Position numbers and translations under genes: made by a program. The notes below the pieces were generated by a model that saw nothing but the letters and a program-made list of their open reading frames with translations, was not told the origin of the DNA and searched no databases. From positions 42,842,001 to 42,906,000 of the forward strand of contig NC_086108.1 in the NCBI RefSeq assembly GCF_963921235.1: a DNA stretch of 64,000 bases. The letters run 5' to 3'. This DNA is from Mobula hypostoma (Eukaryota). How positions within the stretch are numbered: position 1 is the first letter of the stretch; the number at the start of each line of letters is the position of its first letter. Of this stretch, positions 233 through 64,000 are shown one piece after another.

Positions 233-493
233 TCCCTTGTGAGCCACAGAATGTCACAGTACAACTGGATTGTAACCTCAATACAGCTCTGGTTCTGTGG
301 GACGACAGTAAAGGAGCGCTGTGGTACACTGCTGTTGCGGAAGGAGCTGATGGGAACATCGTGTCGTGCAGAACGTCAGAAGCATCATGTAGAACACCCC
401 TGTTACTGTGCGGCCAGATATATTCTGTGTATGTTGTAGCATCTGACAACAATTGTAACCATTCTCTGAGCTCAGTGGTTGAAATTCAAGCAG
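233..493 (+). CDS. Exon A1 (FN3 domain, 261 nt)
   Basis: ttttcAG|TCCCTTGTGAG...GCAG|GTaact; VPCEPQNVTVQLDCNLNTALVLWDDSKG... Confidence 0.92.
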
Positions 494-3400
494 GTAACTA
501 ATTAATGATATGGGATGTACCAGTATGAAACAAGCTTACAGCATGTTTGGTTAGCTTGTCATGCATTTCTGTGCAATCATTTATACTCTTTCATTCAATT
601 TGTAATCTCAATCCCATGCTAGGCATTTTTAATGCTTTATAAGAATTTTTAGAATTTATTGTGGGAGTTTTTTCAATATTATTTTATATTTACCCATTTC
701 TGGAATTTATACAAATTGACTGCCCTTTACTTATTTATTTCTTTGATTCCCCCAGCTCCCTGTAGTCCCCAGAATGTAAGTGCTCACTTGGACTGTACAA
801 CGCACGGAGCGTCAGTTTGGTGGGAGGAGAGCGAGGGGGCAGTGTACTATGCTGCCATGGCAGAAGGAACGGAAGGAGACAAGTACTCGTGCAATACAAC
901 AGAAGCAAACTGTGAGATCGCAGGCCTCCCATGTGGCCAGACGTACAATATATCTGTGTTAGCGATGGACGAGAATTGCACCAGTTTACCAAGTCCAGCT
1001 TTTAATATTGAGACAGGTAAACTTATAATTACCTTTTTATTTAACATAACAAAAGCTACCTTATTTCACTCGTTAAGAAAATGCAGGAATAAATTGAAAT
1101 GTCATCATTAGGGCTCTACATCAAATATATTCACAATAACTATAGTTAGTTATTATTGTAAGCTTCATCATCAATTGTATCAGTTGCTGATCCTTGCTCT
1201 GAAAAACTGATTACGCAGTTATTTTCCTTTCATTCCCAACAATCAATTTGAGAACCTTTTAATGTAAAGATAAAGTGCAATTTCATAATTCTGTTTGTTT
1301 GTAAGATATGGACATATTTATGCAGGAATACATTGACAGTACTTTATTAATTTGATTATAAAACTATGATTATTTTTTCTGCAGTACCATGTATCCCACA
1401 GAATGTGGTAGCTCACATCAACTGCGAGAATAACACTGTCTCAGTGTTTTGGGATCCCAGCAATGGCTCAGAGTCATACCATGTAACAGCACAAGGGACC
1501 AATGGCCACTGGGCCTCCTGCAATACAACAGGCACTGAATGTGAGGTCTCTGATGTGTACTGTGGACTGTATTACTACATAACTGTACAGGCAGTCCGTA
1601 TGCAGTGTAACAGCTCACACAGCTCTGCTGTGGCAGTTAAAACAGGTAATTCTAGTCAAAACTGTATATTAAAATTCTGCAGATATTCTCTTTTGCATCT
1701 AACTGTTATGTGGCTGAATACTTGTGCAACAGTTTCAGGTTAAGTTCTTCTTCTTGCAGTACCGTGTGTCCCCCAGAACGTCAATGCTTACATGGACTGT
1801 GATGCTGGATTTCTGTCAGTCTCCTGGGAGTTCAGTGAAGGTGCATCATCATACATTGCCACTGCAGAAGGAGGTGACGTGCAGCGATGCAGCGCCAACG
1901 ATACGCTGTGTGACATCACTGACCTGTCCTGTGGAGAGACCTATACTGTCACAGTCCTTGCGCACGATGACACCTGTGACTCTGCTGAAAGTCCTTCCAT
2001 CACAATGAGAACAGGTAACTGCTGGGTCGTCCAATTTCTGAATCGCTGATTTCTCCATCAGTCACACTAACTGATTTCTGATCTGGCAAAAACTCTATTT
2101 TCCTGAAAAAGCTCTCCTGTATCTTTTCAAGCAATTACAAAAACCAGTCCCTCAAGTCAGCTGCTGCTGTACATCCGCCACTCATTTGATCTCCTTGTTC
2201 TCTTCTAGTTTGCTGCATCCCACAGAACCTCGATGTCCATGTAGACTGTGACACAAACGATGCTTCAGTACTGTGGAGCCACACTAAAGGTGCAGTCTCT
2301 TACTCGGCAACAGCAGAAGGAAGTGATGGGCACCCAGTTTCCTGTGAGACGGCCAGTACCGAATGTCAGATAACCAACCTATACTGTGGACAGGTGTATA
2401 ATTTAACTGTGACAGCACTGGACGGTGTGTGTGACACCTCACAAAGCTATCATTTTGAATTTAGCACTGGTATGTCTTTCTACTTCTATATTCCTCATAA
2501 TTCTAAACTGTGCAGCCTGTTTGCCACAACAAATTAATTCACTGTGCACCGTACATTCCACAATGTAAAAATATTCCAATGCACTTAATTGGGACTTTAT
2601 TAGCAAATCTATGATTTGTTGTGTCAAATTATTCTAAGTGACACTTAGATACCTAACTTTAAGTTAGATGACATTAACAATCTAACATTTCTGCTATGTC
2701 CTGATAAATCTTTCTTTTCATTGAAAACATAGAAATATTGACAGGTTTTGTGCAGGAAAAGGCCCTTCAGCTAGGAGGTCTATTCCAACCACCATGCCAC
2801 ATTAAATTAACCTTAGCTGTCTGCACATGGGTCATCCGTCTTAACCAATTTCCCCCTGGGATCAATAAAGTATGACTATGACTATGACTATGTTCCCTGC
2901 CTGTGAACATGCTGTTTAAATGTGTCAAAAGACTTAAGTCCAAAAATATTGTATCGATTTTTCTCTTACTTTTGCTTTTCTATATTAATGGTGTTTAAAA
3001 GGGCATGTTTTTCTTTTTGTAAATATATGGTGACTGTTATTTGAGGACTCTGTATTCAAAATTGTTTGTCAAGATTGGCAATATAACCTGGACCACCTCC
3101 AGAAAAAAAGCAGTTGCAGTATCTTACCCAGTCACAATGTGTTTCTGTAATTTGCAGCCCCTTGTACACCCGAACACACTTCCACCAGTCTGGACTGTGA
3201 CACCAGGAGTACGTCAGTGACCTGGGCGAAGGCTGAGGGTGCCATGTGGTACATTACAACAGCAGAAGGACAAGATGGACACGTTTCACTGTGTAACACA
3301 ACAGAGACGAGCTGTGACTTTGTGGACCTGCACTGCAGTCAGACATATTCAATAACTATAACGGCAGTGGACAGTGACTGTCAGAGTGTAAATACCTCTA

Positions 3401-6400
3401 TTTTTGAAACTGAAACAGGTAAAAATCTGAAGGAGTTTATGAGGCATGAGAAATGTTAATCCAGTGCAAGATAGTTCATTTTCTGAGGATTGTGATCCAG
3501 GAGAGCCACATTGGTAATTTTGGTGTTTATGTTATGTTTGCTTTTAGTTCTAATTTAAAAAAAATAAAGTGGATGCACTATTCTCTAGGTTTCCATGCAA
3601 CTTTTAACACCTTATAAAGGTAGTTATAAATTTCTATTTGTAGAGTGAAGATTTTTCCCTCTTGCTGTGGGACTATTTCCCTTGGGTTTTAAAAATAAAA
3701 TTGTAAATTGTAGTCTGAAGATACTGTGTCTTTGAACAGGAAGTTGGTTACTGCATGACTTCCCAGGATATTTTCTACATTTCGCTTTTTTCCTCTGACT
3801 TTGATATTGAAAGAAACATTCAAAGTGCACTTCTATCATTTATTAGTGACCCATTTGTTTTGTTTTCTCCTCCTGTCCTGAAGCCCCTTGTCCCCCTCAG
3901 AACGTACACGCTGATGGTGTTGGTGTCACCGCCTTTGTATCATGGGAGCCGAGTAACCTCACAGTGTGGTATACCGCTACGGCACAGGGGAGCGATGGAC
4001 ACACAGCCACCTGTACCACATCCAAAACAAACTGTCTCATCCCAGATCTTCACTGCAGCCAAACATACAACATCTCTGTCCTCGCATTTGGTGAAACCTG
4101 TAGCAGCTTCCGGAGCTCCCACTACGAAATTCATACAGGTAAATTAGAAAAAAGCCAGTCAGTGATGTAGTGGCATCAGCATCGAACTTGGAGGCCAATG
4201 GTAGCGGTTCGAATCTAGCCAGCCCCTTACACGCTTTCCATCTGTGCTGGGATGAGTGTTGAGGCAGCAACATGACCCCGTAAAAAACAGACAAATGCTA
4301 AGGAAATGGCAAAAAAAATGCCTCCCAATGCGCCACAACAGCCGAAGAAGAACAGCAAGAACAAATTAGAAAAAGAGGATCTGTTTCTATTACATCTTTC
4401 ATCTAAGCGCATTTCATAATTGTATGTCTATTATTTATTAAAAAATTCACTGGCAAGACCAACATTTATCAGTTCCTCCCAGTTTCATTTGGGTAGGTGC
4501 TCTTGAATTCCCTTTTTAAACCATTTTCTTTTCTCTGCTGAAAGCACTCCCACAGTAATATTCAGCAGGGCTTCCAAGATATTAACTCGGCAACGGAAAA
4601 AAAATGTATTTTCATGGTCAGGATGTTGTGCGAATTGAAGAGGAACCGGGAGTTGTTGATACACATTGCAGCCTCAGAGTGAACTTGTGATAGACAAAGT
4701 GAATGTTTATGATGAAGGATGGGATGCCATTCCAATAGATTGCATTGTACGAGATGGCATCAGCCTTGTGAGCTGTTGTTGTTGCCAGGCAGTACAGAGA
4801 GAGCCTTCAGTTCACCACTCATTGTAGATGGTGGTTGCTAGATGTAAAGTGAAAGTGATGTTTGCTATAGTCGGTGAGTCTAGGGCATGATCTCAGAATA
4901 GAAGGATGTCCATTTAGAACAGAGATAGGGAGGAATTTCTTTTGCCAGAGGGTAGGGAACCTGTGGAATTCATTGCCATAAATGGCTTGGTCATTGAGCA
5001 TAATTAAAGCAGAGGTTGATAGGTTGCTGATTAGTCAGGGCATCAAAGGTTACAGGGAGAAGGCAGGAGAATGACATTGAAAGGGATAATAAATCAGCAA
5101 TGTTGGAATGGCAAAGCAAATCATGGGCCAAATGCTGCAATTCTGCTCCTATATCTTATGGTCTATGTGAAGTTTCCAGCTTCCAACTTACTCTTATCGC
5201 CACAACATTCATATGGCTGGTCCTGTTGAGTTTCTGGCCAGTGGTGACTACAGCATTTTGGTGGTTTTCCTTCAGTGAGGGTAATGCCATTGATCATCAA
5301 GGAGAGATGATTAGATTACATCTTTTTAGAGAATATCTCAGCATTACACTTGCGTTTTGCAAATGCTGCTTTCTGTTTATCAGCCTATGACTAGAAATTA
5401 TCCAGGCTTACTGCATGCAGTTGTACACGATTCACTTTTCTGAGAGGTAGAGATGGGATTGAACATGGTGCATTTCCTAGCAAGTATCCCCATTTCTAAC
5501 CCTATGATGGAAGGATGGTCATTGGTGAGGCATCTGAAGATAGTTAAACCTAGAACATTGTCCTGAGGGCCTGAAAAAGGTGTAATGACTTCCAGCAGCC
5601 ACAAACTCCCTTTTCTCAAATATAACTCCGGTCATGAGAGAGCTTCACCTTGATTCCAATTGAATTTAGTTTTAACGGGAATGTTTAAGACCACTTTCAG
5701 AAGCATTTTGCATCATTAAAAAGGCTGGTTTTGAAGTGTAGTAACTGTAGGTAATAAGCCAATGAGTTGCTCACATCAGAGTCCCAAACAACAACACAAT
5801 TTGTGCAACACTTTTAGCATTTACAATTACTGGCTGAGGAGACAGTAATTATTTGCAGTGGACTGGTCCTGCTTTTGTGCACCTGCAAATCAAAGGAATT
5901 TTATGCTTGGATGCAAGAATTTCATTGTTGTCTCTCTCCTAGGCCATATTGGCTATTCGTGCGCTAAGTTCTGAAGCATGTTTTCCACCCTAGAGCTGTG
6001 ATGTTGTCATCCCTTTCCCAGTGCTCGCGGCCTTTATGCAGTGGGAATTCAATTTTGCTGAAGAAGGAAGCTGAGATGGATGGCATCTCTTTTTAATAAT
6101 GGCTGGAAGTTGCTAAACTTTATCTTTCCAGATATACTAGGCTTTGTCAATATGGAGAAAAAGAGGCTCTGTCAATATGGAGAAAAAGAATATTCTTGGT
6201 TTCGGCTCCTCTCCATTTTTTAAAATTGTCCACTACCATTCAGGACTGGATGTGATTGTTCCACAGCTTTGAGCAGGTCATTTGATTGTAAGATCACTTC
6301 AGTCTGCTGCACCATTTATCAGAGACACATGGCTCCAAGTCCACCTTAACTCCTTTCTGATGATTGGCACAACCTACCTGTAATCTTGCACTACTCCGCA

Positions 6401-9400
6401 GTCCACCAGTCATCTTTTTCACCACTGCCCTCTCCTCCTCTTTATACTGGCCATGTCACCTCTCCACTCTCAGTTCTGATGCATCAACAATTCCCTTCTT
6501 CTGGCAGATGCTGCTCACCCCACTGAGTTCCCCAGCAGATTCTCCAGAATCCAGCATCTGTAGACTCTTGTGTCTTCGTGGTCCTGTGTGGTGCTTTCAC
6601 CAGGAAGATAGATTAACATAGGTGCCCCTTGTGGTTTTCATGGCATGTTCTATTCATTGAACCAGGGTTCGTCCTCAGGGAAGTCTATGAGATTACAGAT
6701 CTGGGTTGATACCCATTTCTTAGCTCCTAGAACTGATGTGAATCATTCCTATTTAATACTGTTAAAGAAACGCGGAATATGACAGAGAGCATTATCAATT
6801 GGATATTGGACATTGTCTCCACAAGGACATTGCAGACAAATTTCAGACAGATACAACTGCAAAAGAGAGATTGAGTATGAGATTAACTAGTTTATCACTT
6901 CATGTTAATTGCCTTGACACCTGCCGCAGCCCCATTTGGTTTTGAGTCAGGGCTGTTGTAGATGACTATGTTATGGGCCCTCCCACCCTAAGTGCTTCTT
7001 CCAAACTTCTCAACATAAAAGAGTATGCTGATCCATGAACTAGGAGAGGAAAGTGAGTGGTAATTAGCAAGACACAACCCAACATCATGAGACCTCATGG
7101 ACATTGTGTACCTACTTTGATGGATACACCAGAGTTCTGCTGTATCCAATACATCCAACTGTAGAGTCGGATGTATCCATTAATAGTAAAGGAGAGCTCT
7201 GAAGCAAAGTGCATAAAGTAAAATTTTACTTCACTTAAAACCCAAGATGTTTGTGAGGAGAACTTTCCAGGGTGCTTTGAGCTGGATATACCTTTGTCAT
7301 ATTCAAACCCGGTGCTTCAGTTTATCCAATATTATTCATATGATGTTTTAGCATACCAACTTGACCTAAGAAAATTGCTTGCTGCATGTTTGAAGCCATA
7401 TATAGACCAGACTGCACAAAGACAACTGATTTTCCTACTGGAGAGAGTTAGTGAACCAGACAGATTGTTATCGTATTCTAGATGTTTCATATGACTATTC
7501 TTAATGATAGTTTTTTTTAAATTAATTCCAGATATTTTAATTGATTACTTTTAGTTGCTGAATGCCACAGTAAGACTCAAATTCATGTCTCTTATCATTA
7601 GTATGGAACTTCAGACCTCTCATCTTGTAACAGAACCATGTGTTATATTCACTGTTCATATAGAAAGCACTGAGAGATTAAATATCTGTGGATATGGACC
7701 ATAACCTATCAATGACTCGAGCTAGAACTTGTTCAAATGATTACACAATAACATATGAGTTGGCAACATGTGGAATATAAAGGGGACAGATTCACCAGGA
7801 CTATTTAAGTTCATATAAAACATTAGGAAGGGCTACTTCTTAAGATTTTTCTCACATGAATTTTTTAATTGCAGTATTTCTGTTTCTATAGCACCTTGTG
7901 CTCCAGATGAAATCGTCGCCAATGTGGACTGTAACTCCAACAGAGTGGTAGTTTCATGGGGCCGGACTAATGGAGCAAAAGAGTTCGATGTGACCGCCGA
8001 GGGAAGTGATGGTCATACACACTCACACAACACAACAGAGACACGCCACGAAATGCTGGATTTACACTGTGGACAGTCCTATAACATAACCGTAACAACA
8101 CTGAGTTACAGCCGGCATGGCATTTCGAGTACTTCCATCCAAATACAAACTGGTAAATACAGCTAATCTTTAAATAGCATATAGCAAGGAAATAATTTTA
8201 TATTATTGTGCATATTTTGGGCCAGTAGGAAAAATTATATTCCAAGTAACACTGTTCATTGCTGAGAATCTAACAACTGAGTTAGGTTCTGATTCAAATG
8301 CAGTATCCTCCTGGTCACATGACTGCCAGAGCAATGCTATACACTATGATTTTTCCAGGCATTTAAAGAGTCATGGCTTTAATACAAGTGATACAAGGGC
8401 TCAAATCTAAACCTGCATATACAGTCTCTGTTGTAACAAAAGGTAATATCTTCAGGAGATTCCAGAGTGCATGTATATACAGACATCACTCACTTCTGTA
8501 AAGATGTTTAGAACAGACTGACAGATGAAGTCTTGTATTTCACAATGAGAGGTTAAATGTTTAAGTGTGAACAGCAAACATTTTATGTTATTATTTTATT
8601 ATGCCCATGTTGAAGGTGTCTTTGAAAGTTAATTTGTTGAACTCATAGTTGTGATTCCACAGATGTAATTCCTCTCTATTTTTTCCTGCCTTTGTCCTAA
8701 TGTGTGAACTGTAGGAAAGCATTTTCAAACCCCCTTCATTTAAAATATTCCCGCTGGTACAGACAATGCAGTGTTCTGTGTTGCAAAATAATAACATTTT
8801 CAAAAAGTTGCTTGGTTATCAATTAAACACCCTATTCCCAAAGTTTTGAGGATACCTTTATGGATTCGTGAGAAAAAAGGAAGACCGTTTTAATGAAAAT
8901 GCATTTTAAAAAGCTGTCCCATCCAATGTACTAATGCTTGTATAGGTTGTTTAATTGCTTAAAGTCGGCATGACTCTATGGTTGTATAAAAACAGAAGCA
9001 TAAGAGGTGTGCGAGATGCTGGATGATGGAGTCACCTTGACAGAAAACAGCCTGCATCATTTTATACTTGCCCTGTTGTACCTGTTGAATCTGTAATCGT
9101 TTCGCTCTGCTTTTGTGTTATCTGGCATGAGGAAGCCAGCTCCATTGGGAATTTGTTCATCAATCCCTTTTGACCAGAGACATAAATATTGATTTCAACA
9201 TAATGTCTGCGATGATGAGTTTGAGAAATAAGGAATGAGAATAATTAAAATTATTCAGTCATTGCTAAAATAAGTAAGTAAATATCTATTCACATATTTA
9301 GTGAAGCATCTAATGAATGATGCATTAGAGCCCATAGATCTTAAAGTAAATATTTGGTAAATTCACAACGATAGTTGATCCTTTTGTCTTACATTCTTTT

Positions 9401-12400
9401 TGATTTCCAATCTTATCTTCAGTCCCTTGTGAGCCACAGAATGTCACAGTACAACTGGATTGTAACCTCAATACAGCTCTGGTTCTGTGGGACGACAGTA
9501 AAGGAGCACTGTGGTACACTGCCATTGCAGAAGGAGCTGATGGGAGCATTGTGTCATGTGGATCGTCAGAAGCATCATGTGGAATACCCGTGTTACTCTG
9601 TGGCCAGTTATATTCTGTGTATGTTGTGGCATCCGACAAGACTTGCAACCATTCTCTGAGCTCAGTGGTTGAAATTCAAACAGGTAGTTTATTAACTGAT
9701 GCTTCATTGTCACAGCAAGGTACGCCAACCAGTGTAGATTTTAATGTGTTGACAAAAGACGCTGGAATTATAATGAACTTTGTTAATAGTGTATTTACAA
9801 TTATTATTTTTCCTAGAAATTTAATATCTCATACCTATTTGTGATAAATTACCTTTGGCACTAATCTGCACATCCCCTTGATATCCATGTCTTCTGTCAA
9901 TCCATGTCAGACAACTTCTCTCTTTTCTGCTTTCAGCATATTTTCTAACCACAGAATATCTCTCTACACAGGCAGCAACAGTTAGTCACGTCGTCTCTTC
10001 TCAGTTGCAACAAAGTTTTCATTATTTTGTTGATTAAATCCTCTCAACCACCAATCTACCCATCTTGCTACATTTTCTTTTCAAAATTCACTTAATTTTC
10101 TCCAGCATTCTTTTCTGGGACACCATAATATATCCCTTCGGAAAAGCCACGTGCATTTCATCAAGAAAGTAAGAATTTACATACAGTATATGCAAAATCC
10201 AAGAAAAGACTTACTACTCATCAAGCCTACCTCACAAGCACAAAGGCCAGCACAATTTAGAAGTAACTATGAAGCGCAATAGACTTGACTGTTGTTCGTA
10301 CAACAACAATCTAAACTGGACTTTGTTGAAAGCGATGATTGTTCACAATAATAACCATACGAGATTTGTTAATGTTGCACGTCACATAATTCATTCACCA
10401 AAACCCTCTCACTGGTGAACAGAAGAAAGGCTTACAAACTGAATGCTGTTTTGGATGCATGTACTTCAGCTGAACTGAAGGTCGGACATAGCCTTTATCT
10501 ATCCTGTTTCTCTCATTCCTTCAGCTCCTTGCAGACCTCAAAATGTAAGCACCTATTTGAACTGTGCAACGCACACGGCATCAGTTTGGTGGGAGGAGAG
10601 TGAGGGGGCAGTGTACTATGCTGCCATGGCAGAAGGAATGGAAGGAGACAGATACTTATGCAATACAACGGAAGCAAACTGTGAGATCGCAGGCCTCCCA
10701 TGTGGCCAGACGTATAACGTAACTGTGTTAGCGATGGACGAGAAGTGCACTAGTTTACCAAGTCAACCATCTGAAATTCAAACAGGTAAAATTTTGATTA
10801 TTCTTTTTTTTTTGAAAACCAACAGAACAGGATCACTAACAAATAGGAATAACATGAATTAGCATAGGTTTATATAATGGATAGGTGTTACGCTAGATAT
10901 TTGGTACAAAATTATTTATGAACCTTTTAAACCAGCCAGATGTTAATCCATACTCTGCTTCCTCTTTCTATAGCACCTTGTATCCCACAGAGTGTGGTAG
11001 GTCACATCAACTGCGAGAATAACACTGTCTCAGTGTTTTGGGATCCCAGCAATGGCTCAGAGTCATACCACGTAACAGCACAAGGGACCAATGGCCACTG
11101 GGCCTCCTGCAATACAACAGGCACTGAATGTGAGGTCTCTGATGTGTACTGTGGACTGTATTACTACATAACTGTACAGGCAGTCCGCATGAAGTGTAAC
11201 AGCTCACACAGCTCTGCTCTGGCAGTTAAAACAGGTAATTCTAGTCAAAACTGTATATTAAAATTCTGCAGATATTCTCTTTTGCATCTAACTGTTATGT
11301 GGCTGAATATTTGTGCAACAGTTTCAGGTTAAGTTCTTTCTTCTTGCAGTACCGTGTGTCCCCCAGAACGTCAATGCTTACATGGACTGTGATTCTGGAT
11401 TTCTGTCAGTCTCCTGGGAGTTCAGTGAAGGTGCATCATCATACATTGCCACTGCAGAAGGAGGTGACGTGCAGCGATGCAGCGCCAACGATACGCTGTG
11501 TGACATCACTGACCTGTCCTGTGGAGAGACCTACACTGTCACAGTCCTTGCGCACGATGACACCTGTGACTCTGCTGAAAGTCCTTCCATCACAGTGAGA
11601 ACAGGTAACTGCTGGGTCGTCCAATTTCTGAACACGAACTCTCTATCAATCATATGAACAATGATTTCCGATGTGGCTAAAATATTGTTCTAAAAATACA
11701 CTTGATTGAAGATTTCAGTTGAATAAACAACTTCATCTTCTTTGTAACTCCATGTGTTTGCCAGATCTATACTGCTCTTCACCTGGTCTTCTTGCTTTTT
11801 TTGTAGTTTCCTGCATCCCACAGAACCTCGATGTCCATGTAGACTGTGACACAAACGATGCTTCAGTACTGTGGAGCCACACTAAAGGTGCAGTCTCTTA
11901 CTCGGCAACAGCAGAAGGAAGTGATGGGCACCCAGTTTCTTGCGAGACAGCCAATGAAGAATGTCAGATAACCAACCTACACTGTGGACAGGTGTATAAT
12001 TTAACTGTGACAGCGCTGGATGGTGTGTGTGACACCTCACAAAGCTCTCTGTTTGCATTCAGCACTGGTAGGTGTCTTGAATTAGATATTATCAATATAC
12101 CATGTTTCCAGTGGTAATATTAGCTACTTATTTTCTGTTGTAAAATATCTGAGACCTCTTATTGGGACAAGGAGCATGGATATTTAAAAGTAACTGGGAA
12201 AAGTCACAACTGATAGCCAGGTATAAAATGTAGAATTTCTGAAAAGTAGCAAGGTATGAGGTGTGTAGATAGGATAAATACAAGCAGGCTTTTTCCACTG
12301 AGGTTGAGTGGGACTACAACCAGAGGTCATGGGTTAAGAGTGAAAGGTGAGAAGTCTAAGGGGAACATGAGGGAGAACTTTTTCACTCAGAGGGTCGTGA

Positions 12401-18400: not shown

Positions 18401-21400
18401 ATGCAAACGCTCTTGTACTTTTCAGCATTTCTCTGTGGATTTTTCTCTCAGAGTCCTTCTATCTCTATCTGACATCACTGAATCAAAGATTCGGTGATCA
18501 AGGAAATCAAACTGAAAGCTTAGGATTCAAACTGAAAGCAAACCAAAGGTTTTAATTTCTTTGGATCTAGAATATGTGGACATTGTTGTGGCTGACTTAT
18601 TAAAGATATTTGAGCTCTGTGACATACTGGCAAGTGATGTCTGTGCCATAGGTTTTAATGTTTATAATTCCTTTTCCACAGCACCATGTGCCCCAGATGA
18701 AATCATTGCCAATGTGGATTGTAACTCCAATAGAGTGGTGGTGTCCTGGGGAAGGACTGGTGGAGCAACCTCATTCGATGTAACTGCAGAAGGCAGTGAT
18801 GGTCATATACGCTCACACAACACCACAGAGACACGCCATGAAATGCTGGATTTACACTGCGGACAGTCCTATAACATAACCGTAACAACAGTGAGTTACA
18901 GCCGGCATGGCATTTCGAGTACTTCCGTCCAAATACAAACTGGTAAGTAACAGTCAGCAAGGAAATAATTCCCATGTGTATTCATTTTGTGTTTCTGCAG
19001 GACAGCGGGAATTGATATTTACTTGTATTTTCTAAATAGCACCCTGCATTCCTGAGAATCTAACGGCTGAGCTTAATTGTGATTTGAACACAATATCCTT
19101 CTGGTGGGATGAGACTGCTGGAGCAAAGTTATACACTGTGACTGTTCGAGACAGTCAAAGAGTTACGGCTTTATTCAACACAAGTGATACAAGGGCTCAA
19201 ATCCGGGACCTGCAGTGTGGTGAATATTATACAATCTCTGTCCTAGCAACAGATGACATCTGCAGGAGGCCCCAGGGAGCAGTGGTGAATGTACATTCAG
19301 GTAAAAGTTTGGTCTCTCGTCACCTGAAGTGCAATGTTTCACTGGCAATATTCAGATTGTTGTTTTCAATATTATTAATAATTCTTTCATTAATTATGCT
19401 TGCTTGAAAGTTAATTTTATAACTTCTTAAACAAACTATTTTAATGCAGGAATATGAACCCATTAGCACCTTTCTTAATAAGCAAGTTGCAATACAAACC
19501 AACTTGCAACAGTCATTTTGCAGTTGAAGTTCAGCCCAACAGGTACTTCTCATCATGATCCACTTCAGTACAGGGCTGTTTCCCCCTTGTATTTTGTGCA
19601 TGTGGACAAGTTATCAACATATGTGGTGCCTATTAGTTTCTTACTAACTGAAGTTGGATCAAATGTTTGCGACTTTCAACCTTCATGTTTAACTCTCACT
19701 AAACTGAGGATTACATCAAACTTAGTGAATTGTATGTGCTTAAAAATGTGCCCATGGGACTTGAGATTACATTTTATAAATCAGCCCAGTCATTCTAATG
19801 CATTACAAATCTTGATTTCCAGCAGCTCTGAGCACAGTACAAAGCCACCATGCACAGCTATCTTCAGGTCGCAGATGCCACAGTCCATGACCCCGATGTT
19901 GTGTCAGCTTTTTGAGGCTGAAAATGCAACTGGCCTGCTCCATGTGCCAAGTGATGTCCACGTGGGCATTTGGGTGTTGTTCCTCCCCATCCCCCTGCCA
20001 TTTGCTATGATTCACAACCTTCTCCCCCACACCACGCTTGTTTTTCAATAAACAAGGATGACTCAACTTGATGATTTTTTTTTTCTGTCAGGTGAATTTG
20101 TTCTTAGGCTGAACAACACCTGTTTTGTGCCCCTAAAGTGGATGAATCACAGTTTCTACGCATCAGTGCCTGAGGCCTTTAGTCTGGCAACTCTACAGTG
20201 GAAATCCATTTAGATTTATATCCAGCTCCATTGCAGATGTTCCCATGGACCCAACAGGAGAAAGTATTATTCCGGTACCATATTCGCATCACAGAGTTAT
20301 TTCCAACATTGCTTTCATGGCTTTGCAGTATTTTCATGAATCCTGATTCTGAGCATTTCTAAACTAACCATCTGTCATCTGCCACAGGAAATGAGTAATG
20401 CTTTTTAATTGGGATATCATTCTGGACAAATGTTAGCTTTTTGTCCCTAGTAAAATTTACAGAGTTCTGAGTCATATTATATGGCTGGGCATGTTAGCAT
20501 TTAGTTACTTCTTTGAGAATTAATTTCAGACATAAATAGCGTAAGGAGTTAGAGCAATGCAAATAAAAATATTATGATAAAGGCTCTGTTTATCCTTCTA
20601 AAGGATGAGTTGCTGAAATGTACATCACTGGCTCGGATGAAGCAGAATGAATCTATTTGCCTCTTTAAACCTGCTCATCCATCTGCTTTCTCCATAGAAC
20701 TCTGCAAGCTTTTTTTCTTTTAATGCATATATTCAAATCCCTTTTCAGACAATTCATTCTAGATAATAATAAGTCTGAGTAAGACCATGTCCTCTTCTCC
20801 ACTTGACCCCTCCCCCAACATCCTCCTCCTGATTTGTTTGTGTCTCTCTTTTGCCTTATAAACATTTATGTACTTCTATAGAAAAAAAAATCATTGAATC
20901 TTCTTCAACTTCCACTCAAGGCCTTGCAATCCATGCTCTCCCTGTGTAAAAAATATATCTTACTTCCTGTCCACTCCTTTACCATTTATCATAAATCTGT
21001 CTGATTGTTACCCTCCTCCCAGAACAAATTTTCCTTACTTTTTCTGGCAAAATCATTCAAAATATTACTTCCCAGCTCCATTTACAGTCTGAAAGAGAGC
21101 CATATCATCCTCTCCAGTATCTTGATGTAACTGAATTCCCTTGCCCCGCCTATTAAATCCTATTAAATCTCCCCTGCACCCTCTCTTCGAACCTCATAAA
21201 CCTTTCATAATCCTGAAACGGATTCAGTACTCCATTTGTGGCTGCACCTATAATTTATAAAGTTTAACTACCTTCTTCACTTTTCTACTCTACAAAATTA
21301 TGAATACATCTTCAAAATAACTTTCTTCATGACTTCATCCATCCACTTATTTACTTGGTTACGGTTGGTCCAATGGCATGATACCCAATTTAACATTCAG

Positions 21401-33400: not shown

Positions 33401-36400
33401 AGTACTCACTCATTTCAGTAATTCATGTGTTTGCCTCTCTCCAAGTCCCTTGCCCCCCTCAGAACATACAAGCTGATTGTGCTGGTGTCACTGCCTTTGT
33501 AACGTGGGAGCTGAGTAACCTCACAGTGTGGTACACCGCTACGGCAGAGGGGAGCGATGGACACGCAGCCACCTGTACCACATCCAAAACAAACTGTCTC
33601 ATCCCAGATCTTCACTGCAGCCAAACATACAACATCTCTGTCCTCGCATTTGGTGAAAGCTGCAGCAGCTTCCGGAGCTCCCACTATGAAATTCATACAG
33701 GTAAAAAAGAAATAAAGCTTTATATAGCACCTCTCATCTCCCTGCAATGTTCTGACAGAGCTTGCAATGAAGAGATTATTTTTGAAGTGTTTGCAGCGTA
33801 GGAGTCACGGAAAAGTGAGCAGCCAGGCTATGTACAGCGATCTCTGAAGAAAAGTCATTAAACTGAATTATTTGGTTAGAAAGGGCAGTTCCCTGGTGAC
33901 GCAGTAGTGCATACTTCTTCAAAAGTGTTCTTCAGTATCGTTAACTGGAACAGACGTCGCCGAACTGCTATTATGTGCCTGGGAATCTTTACTCGATTGA
34001 ACAATAATCATTGTAAATTATTCCAACATTGTTTTAAATTGCCCTCCTGCTAAATTTACATTTGGGTGGTTAAAGTTAAAACTGCATTGCAATGCTGAAG
34101 TATACAGAGATGGTACACAGCAACTCACTGTTATAACCAGGCATTGGAGTGGCCAATTGTCCATCATTCTGATGTGCCTACTTTTTCAAGCAATTGGTTT
34201 TAAACTAAACGGACACAGAAACACAGTCTGTCAACTTAGTCACTCTAGTCTGTCTCTCAGTTTCCTTTTCTCGGTGTGATGACAGGTTGCTATGGAAGTA
34301 CACTCCCAAGCTCCACTGATTTCATTTCCAATCATCGCACGGTGTTCAACTTTCACTTTGTCTCTATAAGTTCCAAAATTCTTTATGGATTTTGGAAACA
34401 GAATCCTTCTAATTTTTCCAGTCAACATTGATGACTTAGTTTTCAAACTTGGTGCCAATCACACTGACCCTAAGTATTGTCCTGAAGAAAGGTCTTGGCC
34501 CAAAACATCATCTGTTAATTCATTTCCATGGATGCTGCCTGACCTGCTGAGTTCCTTCAGCATTTTGTGTTTGTTGCTCTGGATTTTCAGCATCTGCAGA
34601 CTTTCTCAACCCTCTCTCTTGACCTGGAATTCCTTTGATTCTAATATGGCTGGGCTGAGTGGACAAATGTAGAACAAATTTGAAGATGTTTAACTTCAGT
34701 GATTTGCTAGCAGGTAGTGGATTTTAATTTTTGTATTTCGTTTTCCACAGCACCATGTGCCCCAGATGAAATCATTGCCAATGTGGATTGTAACTCCAAT
34801 AGAGTGGTGGTGTCCTGGGGAAGGACTGGTGGAGCAACCTCATTCGATGTAACTGCAGAAGGCAGTGATGGTCATATACACTCACACAACACCACAGAGA
34901 CACGCCATGAAATGCTGGATTTACACTGTGGACAGTCCTATAATATAACCGTAACAACACTGAGTTACAGCCGGCATGGCATTTCGAGTACTTCTGTCCA
35001 AATACAAACTGGTAAATAACATACAGCAAGGAAATAATTTCCATGTGTATTCATTGTGTGTATTTGCAGACAGCGATAAAATTGATATTCATTTGTATTT
35101 TCTAAATAGCACCCTGCATTCCTGAGAATCTAACAGCTGAGCTTAATTGTGATTTGAACACAATATCCTTCTGGTGGGATGAGACTGCTGGAGCAAAGTT
35201 ATACACTGTGACTGTTCGAGACAGTCAAAGAGTTACAGCTTTATTCAACACAAGTGATACAAGGGCTCAAATCCAGGACCTGCAGTGTGGTGAATATTAT
35301 ACAATCTCTGTCCTAGCAACAGATGACATCTGCAGGAGGCCCCAGGGAGCAGTGGTGAATGTACATTCAGGTATTGCTCATTTCCTGAAAGCTTTTTGTG
35401 ACAGATCAGCAAATGAAGTCTTGCAATCCACTGGCAATATATCATTGTGTATATTTCCAAATAATTAAAAATTATCCTCATGTTAAACATTTTTCAAAAT
35501 GTCATTTCTACCTCAACTTGAGATATTTCCAGTGGTGTAATGGGAGTAATGTTTGCTGCCGTGTGAGTTCTGATTAATGGATCATTTCCCTATGTTATTT
35601 GTACGGGATTGCAGCATTTTCACAGGTGTATTTCTAAATCAACCACTGTCCATGCTCACCCTGGAAACGATCAAAGCTATTCGTAAGGACCACCCATAGA
35701 ATGATAAACATTGTTTTAGCTCCAGCCAGAAGTTTGGAATTCTGACCGTGTACTTAATAAAATGAATATTGAACTCATCACCAGCTCCACTTGCTTCAGT
35801 GCCTTTACGTAATGGAATTTCCTCATTCTTCGCTATCATTCCACCAAATCTCCATGTACTTTGCATGCTTCGTAAAGTGTAATGTGCAGAATTTAACAGA
35901 GTATACCAGTAATGGGGAGTACCAGAAATTTAGAAAGATTCAGAATTTTTTTCCTTGCTTTTTTACCACCTAGAGGAGAACTCTTCTATGGTCACATTGT
36001 CCATGCATGTGAGAAGACTGGCTTGTCACTATTATTGACAGGCTTGTTAAGTCAAAATTATTCATGTCTACTGAGAATAAGTGAGCCTGCACTAAAACCA
36101 ATGCACCGAGTCATAATCTCTAACCAATCTCACATGCACTAAATCTATTGGGCTCTTTTTAACCTGAGTCACTGGGCAGGAGAACTACAGCGTAGGAGGG
36201 ATATTAGATTTATATTCCATGCTTTTAATTGAATTGTATATACAAAGATATGGTCAATGAAACTTAATGGGTAGAATTGATTGCAACCTGTGGTACACAC
36301 TCAAATTAATATGTAACTCACCCAGGATGCCAGGACTAACAGTGCAGGAATGGCTGTTCAGATCCCATGTTGGGATATCTAATCTGTAATACTGAAACCT

Positions 36401-45400: not shown

Positions 45401-48400
45401 GGACAAGATGGACACGTTTCACTGTGTAACACAACAGAGACGAGCTGTGACTTTGTGGACCTGCACTGCAGTCAGACATATTCAATAACTATAACGGCAG
45501 TGGACAGTGACTGTCAGAGTGTAAATACATCCATTTTTGAAACTGAAACAGGTAAAAATTCCTAGAGGCTTAAGATGTTTGAAAATCATTTCATTGTCAC
45601 AGCAAAAAGGTTGTTCTCCAGACTGCAGTCCAGTCAGGTCACACTGTTAGTTTAAGAATTTGTAAAGACTCTTGTTTTCCTCTGAGTGGTGATAGAATTC
45701 AGCATTGTCAGTAGGTTTCTGCATGTCTTCTAGCATTAACCCTTTACATTAGAAGGTTTAATTTCTTCCATTTTCAGATAAGTGAGCCAAAGCCTTGTGA
45801 CAAAATAACTTGTTAGAAAATTAAGACCCTGATGCACTGTATGTATTTGAATGAGAATATACTGTAATTACGTCATCACTGTGCATCTGTACAGTAAAAG
45901 TTTATTTTCTGTTGTGTATATTAATGGAAACAATTGAAACTCTGTACTACTATAATTAAATATTGATTCTTTTCTCTCTCCTCCTGTCCTGAAGCCCCTT
46001 GTCCCCCTCAGAACATACAAGCTGATTGTGCTGGTGTCACTGCCTTTGTATCATGGGAGCCGAGTAACCTCACATTGTGGTACACCGCTACGGCAGAGGG
46101 GAGTGATGGACACACAGCCACCTGTACCACATCCAAAACAAACTGTCTCATCCCAGATCTTCACTGCAGCCAAATATATAACGTCTCTGTACTCGCATTT
46201 GGTGAAACCTGCAGCAGCCTGCAAAGCTCCCACCATGAAATTCAGACAGGTAATATAGAAAGAGAGAACCTCTCTTCAACACATGAGGCCTTTTCATCTC
46301 CTCAAGACTGTTCACACTCAACAAAGTGGGTCCAGTCATCTTCAGACTAGCCTCCGATTATATATTTAATTGTTAATACAGGTCCACAATCCCTTATACG
46401 AAATTCTTGGGGCCAGTTGCATTTCGGAATTCAGAATTTTTCGGATTTCAGACCCCCCCCCCACCGATACCAACAAACACGTATTTAACCTGTCTCAGCG
46501 CGGAGGACTGTAAGACNNNNNNNNNNNNNNNNNNNNNNNNNNNNNNNNNNNNNNNNNNNNNNNNNNNNNNNNNNNNNNNNNNNNNNNNNNNNNNNNNNNN
46601 NNNNNNNNNNNNNNNNNNNNNNNNNNNNNNNNNNNNNNNNNNNNNNNNNNNNNNNNCCAACAAAAACATTCAATAAAACATAAAAATATACAGCTTCAAA
46701 CGAACCGAATCAAACAAATGGTAAATGACTTATTGGAATAAATGTAGAACATCACTGTCAGTGTCGCTATAAAACTTCAGTAACTTGTCTTTCTGTTTAT
46801 TTAAATCATGTGCAGTGGTAATTCCGACACTATTTTCTTCAGTAAGACGCCGCACAGACACACCACGATCAAGCTTCGGCAATAACTCCACTTTCTGTGT
46901 TATTGATAGAGAAGATTCCTTCTATTTTTCTCATTGTTACCCATAGGAGTATCTGCAGCTCTTTTTGACATTTTCACAGTGAAATTAAACGCAAAGTCAA
47001 CAGTGAACACAAAACGTCAGCAAACAGCAAATGTACGTGTAACCAGTATGAGCGCTGAGCCACAACTGATGCCTGGCGGCCTCTGCTAGTGCTGCCACAT
47101 CACACCTGAGTGACGTCAGCTGTTGGCGAAAAAAACTTCGGTTTTCAGAGCTTTTTGGATTTCAGAATTTCGAATAAAGGAATGTGCACCTGTAACCTAA
47201 TTGCTTTTACTATCTCTGATTGAAATTCAAATTATAGGCTGTCATAAGGTTACCTGGGGTAAGAGTCTGTTTGCAGTGCACAACCTGCTCATCCTCATGG
47301 ATTGCCTCTCAGTATAGAGAACCAGCTTGGCCTTCAGATCAAATTAGTGTCGGTAAACAACAGGTCATTGGGACAGTGGTTCTCTTAATTTCTCTCAGGA
47401 TACCAGATCAGGTTTTATAACTGAAATGATTGATAATACTTGTTAATGACCGCAAAATCCATCTATCGATATTCAGTGAAAGCAGACAGGTCTGTTGGTC
47501 AGGCTTGCTCTTGACTTGTTTAACCAATGCGTAAATTGAGATTTCAATCTATAGAATATAAAGGTGACTTTGTCAGAGCAACCTAAGTTCTGTAAAATGT
47601 TGGCAACAACCATCTCTCCATCCTCTGGCACGAGCCTGATGAATTTTAATGTTTACATATTATTTTCTATAGCACCTTGTGCTCCAGATGAAATTGTCGC
47701 CAATGTGGACTGTAACTTCAACAGAGTGGTAGTTTCATGGGGCCGGACTAATGGAGCAAAAGAGTTCGATGTGACCGCTGAGGGAAGTGATGGTCATATA
47801 CGCTCACACAACACAACAGAGACACGCCAGGAAATGCTGGATTTACACTGTGGACAGTCCTATAACATAACCGTAACGACACTGAGTTACAGCCGGCATG
47901 GCATTTCGAGTACTTCCATCCAAATACAAACTGGTAATACTATCCACTTAGTAGTATGCACAACGGAAATGGTCAGATTTATTAATTATGATACAGTCCA
48001 GGCCAGAAGAATTGATACAATTTTTTTTTATTTTTGAATAGCACCTTGCATTCCAGAGAACCTAGCAGCTGAGCTAACCTGCAGTTCAAATACAGTGTCC
48101 ATCACGTGGAATGACACTGAAGGAGCCAAGTTATATACTGTCGCCGCTCGAGACAGACAAAAAGTAATCGCCTTATTCAACACAAGTAGTACAAGGGCTC
48201 AGCTCCCACATTTGCAGTGTGGTGAATATTTCACGATCTCTGTTCTAGCAACAGATGACATCTGCAGCAGTCCTCAGAGTGCAGTGGTGAATGTACTTAC
48301 AGGTATCGCTCAATTCCATTTGTCGTTTGTTTGGTCCTTCTGTTTGACTACAGTTCGTAGTGCAGATTAGATTAAAGATCACGGCTATACTTCCTTTAAT

Positions 48401-63307: not shown

Positions 63308-63562
63308 GGTAAGTCTTTCTGCCTTGAAAATACATGATAAGTCATTGAAGGTTTATTCTAAACAGATATACCAAAAGGGTTTTTTGATTTTTTTTGTACT
63401 ACAGATTTTTTTTTGTGTATTAGTAACTTAATATAATTGAGAGAAATAGTAGACAAATTTCCTTATTAAAATGTGCTTCTATAGATTTGATTTGTTCAGC
63501 TTGTGGTCAGATGCCCAAATCTATTATTAAAGCATGTTTTGCTTATTTTTATTCCAGTAATT

Positions 63563-64000
63563 TACGAGCCTGACTGAATTTTTTGAGGATGTGACTAAAC
63601 ACATTGATGAAGGTAGAGCAGTAGATGTAGTGTATATCGATTTCATCAAGGCATTTGACAAGGTACTCCATGCAAGGTTCATTGAGAAAGTAAGGAGGCA
63701 TGGGATCCAGGGGAACATTGCTTTGTGGATCCAGAACTGGCTTGCCCACAAAAGGCAAAGAGTAGTTATAGATGGGTCATATTCTGCATGGAGGTCAGTC
63801 ACCCGTGGTGTGCCTCAGGGATCTGTTCTGGGACCTCTACTCTTCGTGATTTTTATAAATGACCTGGAGGAAGAAGTGGAGGAATGGAAATTAAATTTGC
63901 TGACGACACAAAGGTTGGAGGTGTTGTGGATAGTGTGGAGGGCTGTCAGAAGTTACAATGGGACATTGATAGGATGCAAACCTGGGCTGAGAAGTGGCAG
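63563..64000 (+). mobile_element. CR1 RT fragment (runs off the window end)
   Basis: Highly similar to 55250-55680 ([24 protein letters not shown]). Confidence 0.88.

What the first reader, a model, noticed from the sequence alone, without database searches (positions are those of the whole stretch)
8250..8482. Dead exon I1 acts as an internal clock: once non-functional it escaped homogenisation
Seen: an I-like sequence sits 97 nt after H1, the same spacing as H2-I2. Both splice sites are destroyed, and it has deletions and many substitutions, whereas I2 and I3 are nearly identical. Its downstream flank still faintly matches that of I3 (CAGATGAAGTCTTGTATTTCAC vs CAAATGAAGTCTTGCAATCCAC). Inference: unit 1 makes an 8-domain repeat (H1 spliced to A2, frame preserved). 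Its decay shows the units are old, so identity among live exons is actively maintained.
Basis: partly seen in the sequence, partly recalled or inferred. Interest (0 to 1): 0.7.

Follow-up and report, generated by a model that had tools for sequence, protein, structure and literature searches.

The report
Ancient dead exon in ray FNDC7-like gene
A decayed copy of one exon sits unused inside a giant repeat-built gene of a ray; the same dead exon is found in an electric ray and a skate, so it has drifted freely since about the time those groups split, while most working exons around it kept being copied onto each other.

Summary
Window 8250-8482 is a 233-nt decayed copy of exon type I of an FNDC7-like gene built from 9-exon units (A-I). 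It lies 97 nt after exon H1. Its acceptor is AA instead of AG and its donor AC instead of GT. It has five deletions (28 nt) and an in-frame stop. Its substitutions fall evenly on all codon positions.

One RNA-like contig joins H1 directly to A2, so unit 1 encodes eight domains.

The window holds four units, not three. I4 is intact but about 79% identical to I2/I3.

New here: the orthologous dead exon exists in Narcine bancroftii and in the skate Rhinoraja longicauda. In both it follows an H exon and precedes an A exon, the intron before it shares specific features, and the acceptor G is lost. The dead copies differ from each other by at least the neutral divergence of these species. The exon therefore died at or just before these orders split.

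Meanwhile 32 of 35 live ray exons are closer at synonymous sites to another ray copy than to any Narcine copy. High identity stops at exon borders. This shows concerted evolution confined to exons.

I4, A3 and A4 also stayed unhomogenised. That death caused the escape is inferred, not shown.

The parts
7892..8152 (+). Exon H1, a live FN3 exon of 261 nt (phase 1-1) and the last used exon of unit 1
   Evidence: Open frame between AG and GT. Pfam fn3 E=8e-7. An H1-specific contig with no mismatch covers 7968-8028. It is 97.3% identical to H4, and that identity ends within 9 nt and 4 nt of the exon borders.
8153..8249 (+). Relic of the H-I intron (97 nt), now the first part of the H1-A2 intron
   Evidence: It is 78% identical to the matching intron of Narcine and 73% to that of the skate, but at most 58% to H-I introns of live or terminal units. 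All three dead units share a motif just after the donor that no live unit has.
8250..8482 (+). I1, the dead exon (pseudoexon) of type I, 233 nt
   Evidence: blastn E=2e-30 to I3. Acceptor AA, donor AC, deletions of 2, 4, 1, 13 and 8 nt, and an in-frame stop. Its substitution pattern is neutral. GC has fallen to 38.6% from 45-46%, with 21 GC-to-AT changes against 7 AT-to-GC. No contig covers its body.
8483..8543 (+). Relic of the intron downstream of exon I, still alignable to the flank of I3
   Evidence: The blastn alignment 7863-8543 against 34722-35431 runs through it; see also alignment A1.
8153..9422 (+). The functional intron between H1 and A2 (GT..AG, 1270 nt), which contains the dead exon
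   Evidence: Contig X2 record 14 (293 nt) equals 8028-8151 plus 9422-9590 with nothing between them. The junction position is ambiguous by one G.
9423..9683 (+). Exon A2, the first exon of unit 2 and the splice partner of H1
   Evidence: Exon map. The junction contig matches A2 over 169 nt with no mismatch.
19040..19300 (+). Exon I2, a live internal I exon
   Evidence: It is 98.9% identical to I3 (dS 0.035).
35110..35370 (+). Exon I3, a live internal I exon and with I2 the nearest live relative of I1
   Evidence: In the ML tree I1 is nearest to I2+I3.
48042..48302 (+). Exon I4, the live I exon of the terminal unit, not homogenised with I2/I3
   Evidence: Against I2/I3 it is 79% identical, with dS 0.60 and dN/dS 0.28. 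It forms a clade with the terminal I of Narcine at 99/100 support.
47673..47933 (+). Exon H4, the recent exchange partner of H1
   Evidence: dS between H1 and H4 is 0.053, and the flanks are at noise level.

Best explanation
Window 8250-8482 is a pseudoexon. It is the ninth exon (type I) of unit 1 of a giant FNDC7-like gene. The gene's 3' half is a tandem array of 9-exon units, with one FN3 domain per exon and every exon in phase 1-1. The exon stopped being spliced, most simply through an AG-to-AA change at its acceptor. This happened at or shortly before the common ancestor of skates, electric rays and the window's ray. Since then it has evolved as intron DNA. H1 is spliced straight to A2, which keeps the reading frame, so unit 1 contributes eight domains.

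The live exons of the array have repeatedly exchanged sequence between units. The likely mechanism is short gene-conversion tracts that end where homology ends, at the exon borders. Most live exons therefore look young, while their introns and the dead exon keep their old, species-spanning orthology.

What is shown: the decay; the orthologous dead copies in three orders; the neutral substitution pattern; the mosaic, exon-bounded similarity within the species; and one H-to-A2 junction contig.

What is inferred: that gene conversion is the exchange mechanism; that a single acceptor mutation was the killing event; and that the exon dropped out of the exchange because it diverged freely once selection stopped holding it close to its partners.
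For: Lesions and homology.

Neutral pattern: differences by codon position are 22/17/14. dN/dS on the I1 branch is 1.5 (CI 0.54-9.5), against 0.27 on live branches. The I1 branch is 0.21 substitutions per site (CI 0.14-0.29). Changes are biased from GC to AT.

Splicing: a contig joins 8151 to 9422, and no contig lies on the I1 body. The Narcine model P0246 runs D-E-F-G-H-A-B-C-D-E across its own dead I.

Orthologous dead copies: Narcine L002 at about 16047-16235 and skate L004 at about 3703-3928. Each lies about 100-120 nt after an H exon and before an A exon. Their acceptors read AT and AA.

Trees and distances: H-I introns group by unit class across species. In the intron+exon tree the dead clade has 96/99 support and the terminal clade 100/100. 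The dead copies differ from each other by K2P 0.41-0.65. Between species the introns differ by 0.26-0.44, and the median dS of positional orthologues is 0.42.

Array order: dead, live, live, terminal, then T1-T5, in both the ray and Narcine.

Concerted evolution: the best-supported quartet grouping changes from exon to exon (heterogeneity p=2e-13). dS between the same two units ranges from 0 to 0.7 depending on the exon. 32 of 35 live exons are closer to a ray paralogue than to any Narcine copy. Trees of C and D split by species at 100/100.

Exon-bounded identity: the C and D exons are 96-99% identical in all four units. The roughly 110-nt intron between them exists in two forms that cannot be aligned. 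H1/H4 and F1/F4 are 97-99% identical with flanks at noise level.

Age of the units: dS between units at the A and B exons is 0.43-0.70 for most pairs, at or above the species divergence.
Against: The RNA evidence is thin. It is one contig of depth 2 from a run whose RNA nature is only guessed. The H part of that contig carries states typical of H2, so part of it may be a graph chimera or an allele.

The three dead copies share no indel and only one substitution. A long shared dead phase is therefore excluded. Independent deaths of an already dispensable exon cannot be ruled out.

The acceptor base differs in Narcine (T, not A).

Three live exons (I4, A3, A4) have gone as long or longer without homogenisation, so being alive is not sufficient for exchange. 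Within the window, I1's distance to its nearest paralogue ranks only about fifth of 36 exons.

Support for the dead clade from the exon alone is moderate (82/70 and 74/69), and long branches may attract each other.

No conversion event was observed directly. GC3 rises only slightly in the most homogenised exons.
Confidence: 0.82

Rival explanations
1. Independent deaths. The I exon of this unit was already optional (skipped) in the batoid ancestor and lost its splice sites separately in each lineage. I1 would then be younger than the split and would not be a single shared fossil.
For: The three dead copies share no indel and only one substitution. The acceptor base is A in the ray and the skate but T in Narcine.
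Against: The same nucleotide (the acceptor G) is hit in all three. The dead copies differ from each other by K2P 0.41-0.65, at or above neutral between-species divergence (introns 0.26-0.44; median dS 0.42). That leaves no room for a constrained phase after the split. dN/dS on the I1 branch is about 1 over its whole length.
Confidence: 0.12
2. No ongoing homogenisation. The similarity of the live exons comes from recent duplication of units within each lineage together with purifying selection. I1 is simply the oldest surviving copy.
For: I2 and I3 sit in a 650-nt block that includes the intron between H and I (96% identical overall). The skate has clearly recent tandem units of 11.7 kb.
Against: dS between ray units at the A and B exons is 0.43-0.70 for most pairs, at or above the ray-Narcine divergence of 0.42. 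Introns between units cannot be aligned. The nearest unit changes from exon to exon (p=2e-13). The array order is the same in the ray and Narcine. The C and D exons are 96-99% identical across all units although the intron between them has two forms that cannot be aligned. Synonymous sites are homogenised too, which purifying selection on the protein would not explain.
Confidence: 0.08
3. I1 is still used, as a cryptic or regulatory (poison) exon through other splice sites.
For: Open, frame-preserving AG..GT segments formally exist, for example from the AG at 8245-8246 to GT sites at 8370 or 8388.
Against: None of these segments would encode an FN3 domain. No contig covers the I1 body in four runs that do cover G1, H1 and A2. 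The substitution pattern is neutral, and the lesions differ between the three species.
Confidence: 0.04
4. Assembly artefact: the decayed copy is a mis-assembled or collapsed repeat.
For: The gene is highly repetitive, and the window has an assembly gap at 46517-46656.
Against: The stretch 8153-8560 is held at word share 1.00 in four DNA runs of the probable source sample. It is held at 0.54 in DNA runs of a second species label and at 0.18 in a run of unrecorded type from a third. Orthologous dead copies exist in two independent assemblies of other orders.
Confidence: 0.01

Closest known systems
Pseudogenes or paralogues that drop out of concerted evolution within a gene family (for example the escape from concerted evolution described for a CEACAM1 paralogue, PMC7042247, known to me from title and abstract only)
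   Same: One copy stops exchanging sequence with its relatives and diverges while the other copies stay similar.
   Different: Here the unit is a single exon inside one gene, not a whole gene. The copy is dead rather than neofunctionalised. It can be followed as an orthologue across three orders of rays.
Long-lasting concerted evolution by gene conversion in duplicated vertebrate genes (BMP8A/B, DDX19A/B, TUBG1/2; PMC2720389)
   Same: [quoted passage not shown] A mosaic of converted and unconverted segments is seen.
   Different: In those gene pairs the converted tracts span introns as well as exons. Here, in most cases, identity stops within 4-30 nt of the exon borders and the introns keep cross-species orthology.
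Exon-limited gene correction (T-cell receptor C-beta exon 1; PMC2188480, abstract only)
   Same: Homogenisation is confined to one exon of duplicated units.
   Different: That case involves two gene copies. This one is an intragenic array of at least four 9-exon units with an internal dead control.
FNDC7 / FNDC7-like giant FN3-repeat proteins of fishes and amphibians
   Same: The exons encode cysteine-bearing FN3 domains. The nearest proteins are named FNDC7-like in Hypanus, Narcine, Rhinoraja, Pristis and several sharks. They share the same A-I domain order and the T1-T5 tail.
   Different: The names are automatic annotations. Orthology to mammalian FNDC7 and the protein's function were not tested.

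Membership tests
Pseudoexon (decayed, unspliced copy of a functional exon) | Significant homology to functional exons, at the expected position | tested here: met
   blastn E=2e-30 to I3. It lies 97 nt after H1, the same spacing as H2 to I2.
Pseudoexon (decayed, unspliced copy of a functional exon) | Loss of splice signals and of the reading frame | tested here: met
   Acceptor AA, donor AC, 28 nt deleted in five events, and a stop in frame.
Pseudoexon (decayed, unspliced copy of a functional exon) | Neutral substitution pattern | tested here: met
   Differences by codon position are 22/17/14. dN/dS is 1.5 (CI 0.54-9.5) against 0.27 in live exons. Changes drift from GC to AT.
Pseudoexon (decayed, unspliced copy of a functional exon) | Absent from mature mRNA | tested here: inconclusive
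   One low-depth contig joins H1 to A2, and no contig lies on I1. However, the runs are contigs of guessed RNA type. The Narcine gene model skips its dead copy.
Concerted evolution of repeated units by gene conversion | Paralogues more similar within a species than to any copy in a species that split after the duplication | tested here: met
   This holds for 32 of 35 exons at synonymous sites. Trees of C and D split by species at 100/100. The units predate the split, as shown by the dead-exon, terminal-I and intron orthology and by dS at the A and B exons.
Concerted evolution of repeated units by gene conversion | Mosaic, mutually incompatible histories along the unit | tested here: met
   Counts of quartet-informative sites differ by exon (A favours 12|34 with 17 sites; H favours 14|23 with 24 sites). 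Heterogeneity p=2e-13.
Concerted evolution of repeated units by gene conversion | GC enrichment of converted tracts (biased gene conversion) | tested here: inconclusive
   GC3 is 0.49-0.52 in the most homogenised exons (C, D) and 0.38-0.45 in A, H and I. The difference is small and has no control.
Concerted evolution of repeated units by gene conversion | Direct observation of conversion events (polymorphic tracts, donor and acceptor) | not testable with these tools
   This needs phased population data. The H2-like states in a contig otherwise assigned to H1 are only a hint.
FNDC7 family | FN3 domains, one per exon | tested here: met
   Three of the five exons scanned (H1, I2, I4) match Pfam fn3 at E=8e-7 to 6e-5, and two of them (H1, I2) reach Pfam's cut-off; A1 and a tail exon match only weakly (E=0.008 and 0.019). 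The exon map shows uniform exons of 255 or 261 nt in phase 1-1.
FNDC7 family | Orthology to named FNDC7 genes | tested here: inconclusive
   The closest proteins carry the automatic name 'FNDC7-like', and a language-model search points to FNDC7 clusters. No synteny analysis or tree with mammalian FNDC7 was made.

The most novel reading that the evidence does not exclude
In this gene, homogenisation depends on an exon being in use. Introns and a dead exon have kept their species-spanning orthology since the batoid orders split. A live exon only 97 nt from the dead one was overwritten recently. Exchange between units would then be either fixed by selection on the encoded domains, or mechanistically tied to exon sequence through very short, homology-limited tracts. 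The dead exon would serve as a built-in neutral control, allowing the rate and tract length of intragenic conversion to be measured over more than 100 million years.
Probability: 0.4. Interest if true: 0.65.

Novelty: new member of a known kind. Interest (0 to 1): 0.55.

Why it matters
Concerted evolution inside repeat-built genes is usually inferred without an internal neutral reference. Here one exon of the repeat died, and it can be traced as an orthologue in three orders of rays and skates. It gives three things within a single locus. It sets a minimum age for the repeat architecture. It provides a neutral yardstick: about 0.2 substitutions per site per lineage since these orders split. 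It is also a negative control showing what a unit looks like without exchange.

Against that control, 32 of 35 live exons show exchange after the split, confined to the exons. The case could be used to estimate conversion rates and tract lengths. It could also be used to ask whether selection or homology limits the exchange.

It also matters for annotation. Gene models of this locus are split into several 'genes' in Narcine and Rhinoraja. A unit of eight domains is real and not a prediction error.

Tried and rejected
1. Flank comparison with free end gaps collapsed to tiny overlaps. I replaced it with global 60-mer comparisons against a random control.

2. Absolute dating with the pedigree mutation rate of the epaulette shark (7e-10 per generation, PMC10587355) would give impossible ages for 0.2 substitutions per site. 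I therefore give relative ages only.

3. Direction of the H1/H4 exchange. The protein tree placed H1 with Narcine H. Nucleotide trees are uninformative and the Narcine H copies group together. No donor is claimed.

4. Two contigs (X1 record 5, X3 record 21) carry H-I-A but fit no unit of the window exactly. They may come from other units, alleles or graph chimeras and were not used as evidence.

5. Genomic DNA of Hypanus sabinus (the closest annotated relative; I3 99% and A4 98% identical at the protein level) and of Heterodontus was not retrievable. The state of I1 in a stingray and in a horn shark is therefore unknown.

6. The part of the sevengill-shark locus I could read (its first two units) has intact I exons. 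This neither dates nor excludes a dead copy elsewhere in sharks.

7. A tblastn scan found no other pseudoexon in the window.

8. Cryptic frame-preserving segments in I1 exist on paper but have no support.

9. A spliced-RNA template for the exchange is unlikely. High identity extends a few to about 30 nt into introns (F1/F4, H2/H3, and 12 nt before D), and no intron has been lost.

10. Structure and complex prediction were not used, because they would not bear on the question.
Full report
**What is in the window**

The + strand carries a long run of uniform exons of 255 or 261 nt. Each lies between AG and GT, each is in phase 1-1, and each encodes one cysteine-bearing fibronectin type III domain (exon map). 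Of five exons scanned against Pfam, H1, I2 and I4 match fn3 at E=8e-7 to 6e-5, and A1 and a tail exon only weakly. The exons form four tandem units of nine types (A-I), followed by five single 'tail' exons (T1-T5):
- unit 1: 233-8152
- unit 2: 9423-19300
- unit 3: 21413-35370
- unit 4: 39860-48302

The fourth has an H exon 97.3% identical to H1 and an intact I exon only 79% identical to I2/I3.

The closest proteins in public collections are automatically named 'fibronectin type III domain-containing protein 7-like'. They come from Hypanus, Narcine, Rhinoraja, Pristis and several sharks, and they show the same A-I order and the same tail. Earlier notes of this scan call the genome a devil or manta ray. 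I did not verify that. It fits the 88-99% protein identity to the stingray Hypanus.

**Checking the observation**

Unit 1 has exons A-H. An I-like stretch of 233 nt (8250-8482) begins 97 nt after H1, the same spacing as H2 to I2.
- On its own it matches I3 with blastn E=2e-30.
- In the alignment with the three live I exons (A1) the acceptor AG has become AA and the donor GT has become AC.
- Five deletions (2, 4, 1, 13 and 8 nt) remove 28 nt, and the exon frame runs into a stop.
- Identity at aligned sites is 77.3% to I2/I3 and 67.8% to I4. I2 and I3 are 98.9% identical.
- The faint downstream match to the flank of I3 is real.

**Is it dead, and for how long relative to its own history?**

Differences between I1 and I2 fall evenly on codon positions (22/17/14). 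Differences between the live I2 and I4 pile up at third positions (13/12/30). I split the distances among I1, I2 and I4 into three branches:
- The I1 branch has dN/dS 1.5 (bootstrap CI 0.54-9.5); the live branches have 0.27 (0.13-0.49).
- The I1 branch is 0.21 substitutions per site (0.14-0.29).

Changes specific to I1 run 21 from GC to AT against 7 the other way. GC has fallen from 45-46% to 38.6%, close to the surrounding intron. I1 has therefore been unconstrained for essentially the whole time since it last shared sequence with a live I exon.

**Is it skipped?**

They behave like RNA:
- Contigs lie on exons G1, H1 and A2 and on two repeat-like pieces of the G1-H1 intron.
- Contigs do not lie on the other intron sequence.
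- Several contigs show exon-exon joints.

One contig (X2 record 14, 293 nt, depth 2) is exactly 8028-8151 followed by 9422-9590. This is a canonical GT..AG removal of 8153-9422 that joins H1 to A2 in frame. Its A2 part has no mismatch over 169 nt. Its H part has four mismatches that are H2-like states, so that end may be an allele or a graph chimera. The junction itself carries the H1/H4-type end.

No contig covers the body of I1. Only a 24-nt word conserved in all I exons is hit, by contigs that carry a full I exon from another unit. The evidence supports skipping but is thin.

**Related species: the decisive evidence**

A profile-free search with the I2 domain, followed by two searches with full proteins, found elasmobranch gene models. 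I classified their domains against the window's exons.

The horn shark model reads D-E-F-G-H-I-A-B-C-D-E-F-G-H-I-T3-T4-T5. The nine-domain unit and its repetition are therefore shared with sharks.

One model from the electric ray Narcine bancroftii (P0246) goes from H directly to A. I fetched its locus (L002). About 120 nt after that H exon lies a decayed I-like stretch. Its acceptor is AT, it has deletions of 13, 15, 1 and 27 nt, and it contains stops.

The skate Rhinoraja longicauda has the same arrangement (L004: H at 3347-3601, decayed I at about 3703-3928, A at 6975-7232). Its acceptor is AA and it has deletions of 23 and 5 nt.

The short intron in front of the three dead copies shares a distinctive sequence directly after the donor. 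No live or terminal unit has it. Identity between these introns is 67-78%. Identity to H-I introns of other unit classes is at most 58%. The H-I introns of live internal units also match each other across species, and so do those of terminal units.

In an ML tree of intron plus exon:
- the three dead copies form a clade (96/99 support)
- the terminal I exons of the ray and Narcine form another (100/100)
- the live internal I exons form a third

With the exon alone the dead clade has moderate support (82/70; 74/69).

Narcine's array reads: earlier unit, dead unit, two live units, terminal unit, T1-T5. From the dead unit onward this is the same order as units 1-4 of the window.

**How old is the death?**

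The dead copies differ from each other by K2P 0.41 (ray-Narcine), 0.55 (ray-skate) and 0.65 (Narcine-skate). These values are at or above the neutral divergence measured in two other ways:
- between-species divergence of the orthologous introns: 0.26-0.44
- synonymous divergence of positionally orthologous live exons: median 0.42

This leaves no room for a constrained phase after the species split. The copies share no indel and only one substitution beyond the loss of the acceptor G, so the shared dead phase before the split was short.

The simplest reading is one AG-to-AA mutation shortly before these three orders diverged, with a later change to T in Narcine. Independent deaths of an exon that was already optional cannot be excluded (I give this about 0.12).

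The earliest batoid fossils are Early Jurassic (PMC7617449). That the ordinal splits are of that general age is background knowledge, not tested here.

Two smaller observations:
- The stretch 8153-8560 is held at word share 0.54 in DNA runs of a second species label. It is held at 0.18 in a run of unrecorded type from a third label. These shares correspond to roughly 2% and 5% divergence.
- The part of the sevengill-shark locus I could read has intact I exons in its first two units.

**Are live exons actively homogenised?**

Within the window:
- Synonymous divergence between the same two units ranges from 0 to 0.7 depending on the exon.
- The unit that is nearest changes from exon to exon. A supports 12|34 with 17 informative sites. 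H supports 14|23 with 24. B and G support 13|24. Heterogeneity gives p=2e-13.
- High identity is confined to exons. H1/H4 (97.3%) and F1/F4 (98.9%) have flanks at the level of random sequence.
- The C and D exons are 96-99% identical in all four units. The roughly 110-nt intron between them exists in two forms that cannot be aligned, one in units 1 and 2 and the other in units 3 and 4.
- In the H-I block of units 2 and 3, the exons differ by 1-2% and the 97-nt intron between them by 11-16%.

Across species:
- 32 of 35 live ray exons are closer at synonymous sites to another ray copy than to any Narcine copy.
- Typical values are 0.00-0.20 within the ray against 0.25-0.6 between species.
- Trees of C and D split by species with 100/100 support.

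The units themselves are older than the species split. This follows from the dead-exon, terminal-I and intron orthology. It also follows from dS of 0.43-0.70 between most ray units at the A and B exons. The pattern is therefore concerted evolution, not recent duplication. Gene conversion in short tracts bounded by the limits of homology is the likely mechanism, though that is an inference. A spliced-RNA template is unlikely, because identity extends a few to about 30 nt into introns and no intron has been lost.

**What the dead exon does and does not show**

For exon type I the contrast is direct. The live internal copies pair by species: I2 with I3 in the ray, and Ia with Ic in Narcine, each with dS of about 0.02-0.035. 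The dead copies group across species. Every live exon of unit 1 has a ray paralogue at dS 0.02-0.20. I1's nearest relative is at about 0.3. H1, only 97 nt away, exchanged with H4 recently (dS 0.053).

Two qualifications apply.

First, homogenisation is not universal. I4, A3 and A4 have kept their own identity at least as long. I4 is the clear orthologue of Narcine's terminal I (99/100). Within the window, I1's isolation ranks only about fifth of 36 exons.

Second, the causal step is inferred. A plausible account is that purifying selection keeps live exons similar enough to keep converting, whereas a dead exon drifts past the homology threshold during a quiet interval. The data equally allow that type-I exons simply convert rarely.

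**Verdict**

The kind of thing is known: a pseudoexon, and concerted evolution with an escaped copy. This example is unusually clean and old, and it comes with an internal control. It is of moderate interest to molecular evolutionists and useful for annotating this locus.

Noticed in passing
window 1646-1759, 11235-11349, 26996-27101, 43078-43183: The short intron between exons C and D exists in two forms that cannot be aligned, one in units 1 and 2 and the other in units 3 and 4. The flanking C and D exons are 96-99% identical in all four units. Identity starts about 12 nt before the D acceptor and ends about 5 nt after the C donor.
   Followed up: partly
window 37222-37902: A tandem repeat of a 57-nt unit, 11.9 copies at 94% match, lies in the intron between I3 and A4.
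   Followed up: partly
window 53350-56020 and 61250-61570; also 55248-55677 against 63562-64000: Reverse-transcriptase (RVT_1) reading frames of LINE-like elements lie inside introns of the tail region. One piece is repeated at 89% identity near the window's end.
   Followed up: partly
window 4049-4446 and 4845-5242: Two pieces of the G1-H1 intron are covered at very high summed depth by many short contigs with loose ends, in all four RNA-like runs. They are probably abundant transposon-derived repeats.
   Followed up: no
window 3884-4138 (G1) and 2209-2469 (E1): G1 has lost a cysteine that G2-G4 keep (..ADGVG.. where G4 reads ..ADCAG.. and G2-G3 likewise keep the C). E1 starts with CC where E2-E4 have SC. 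These are small unit-specific changes in otherwise conserved cysteine patterns.
   Followed up: no
window 46517-46656: An assembly gap (140 N) lies in the intron between G4 and H4. It was left untouched.
   Followed up: no
window 7968-8152 and 9418-9483 (contigs X1 record 5, X3 record 21): Two contigs carry H-I-A junctions. Their H part is H4-like, their I part is I2/I3-like and their A part is A4- or A2-like. They fit no unit of the window exactly. They may reflect further units upstream of the window, alleles produced by conversion, or assembly chimeras.
   Followed up: partly
L002, L006, L001 (Narcine); L004, L003 (Rhinoraja): The public gene models cut one continuous exon array into several 'genes'. 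The Narcine model also skips an intact A exon at L006 22479-22736 (its I goes to B). The skate model P0245 likewise reads I then B, although its locus shows an A exon after every I. The skate has near-identical tandem units of 11.7 kb (for example L003 12063 to 23775), which indicates a recent local amplification.
   Followed up: partly
L007 29992-32238 (Heptranchias perlo): In one shark unit no E exon was found between D and F. Between I and A of the first unit there is an extra FN3 exon only 44% identical to type C. Unit composition therefore varies in sharks too.
   Followed up: no
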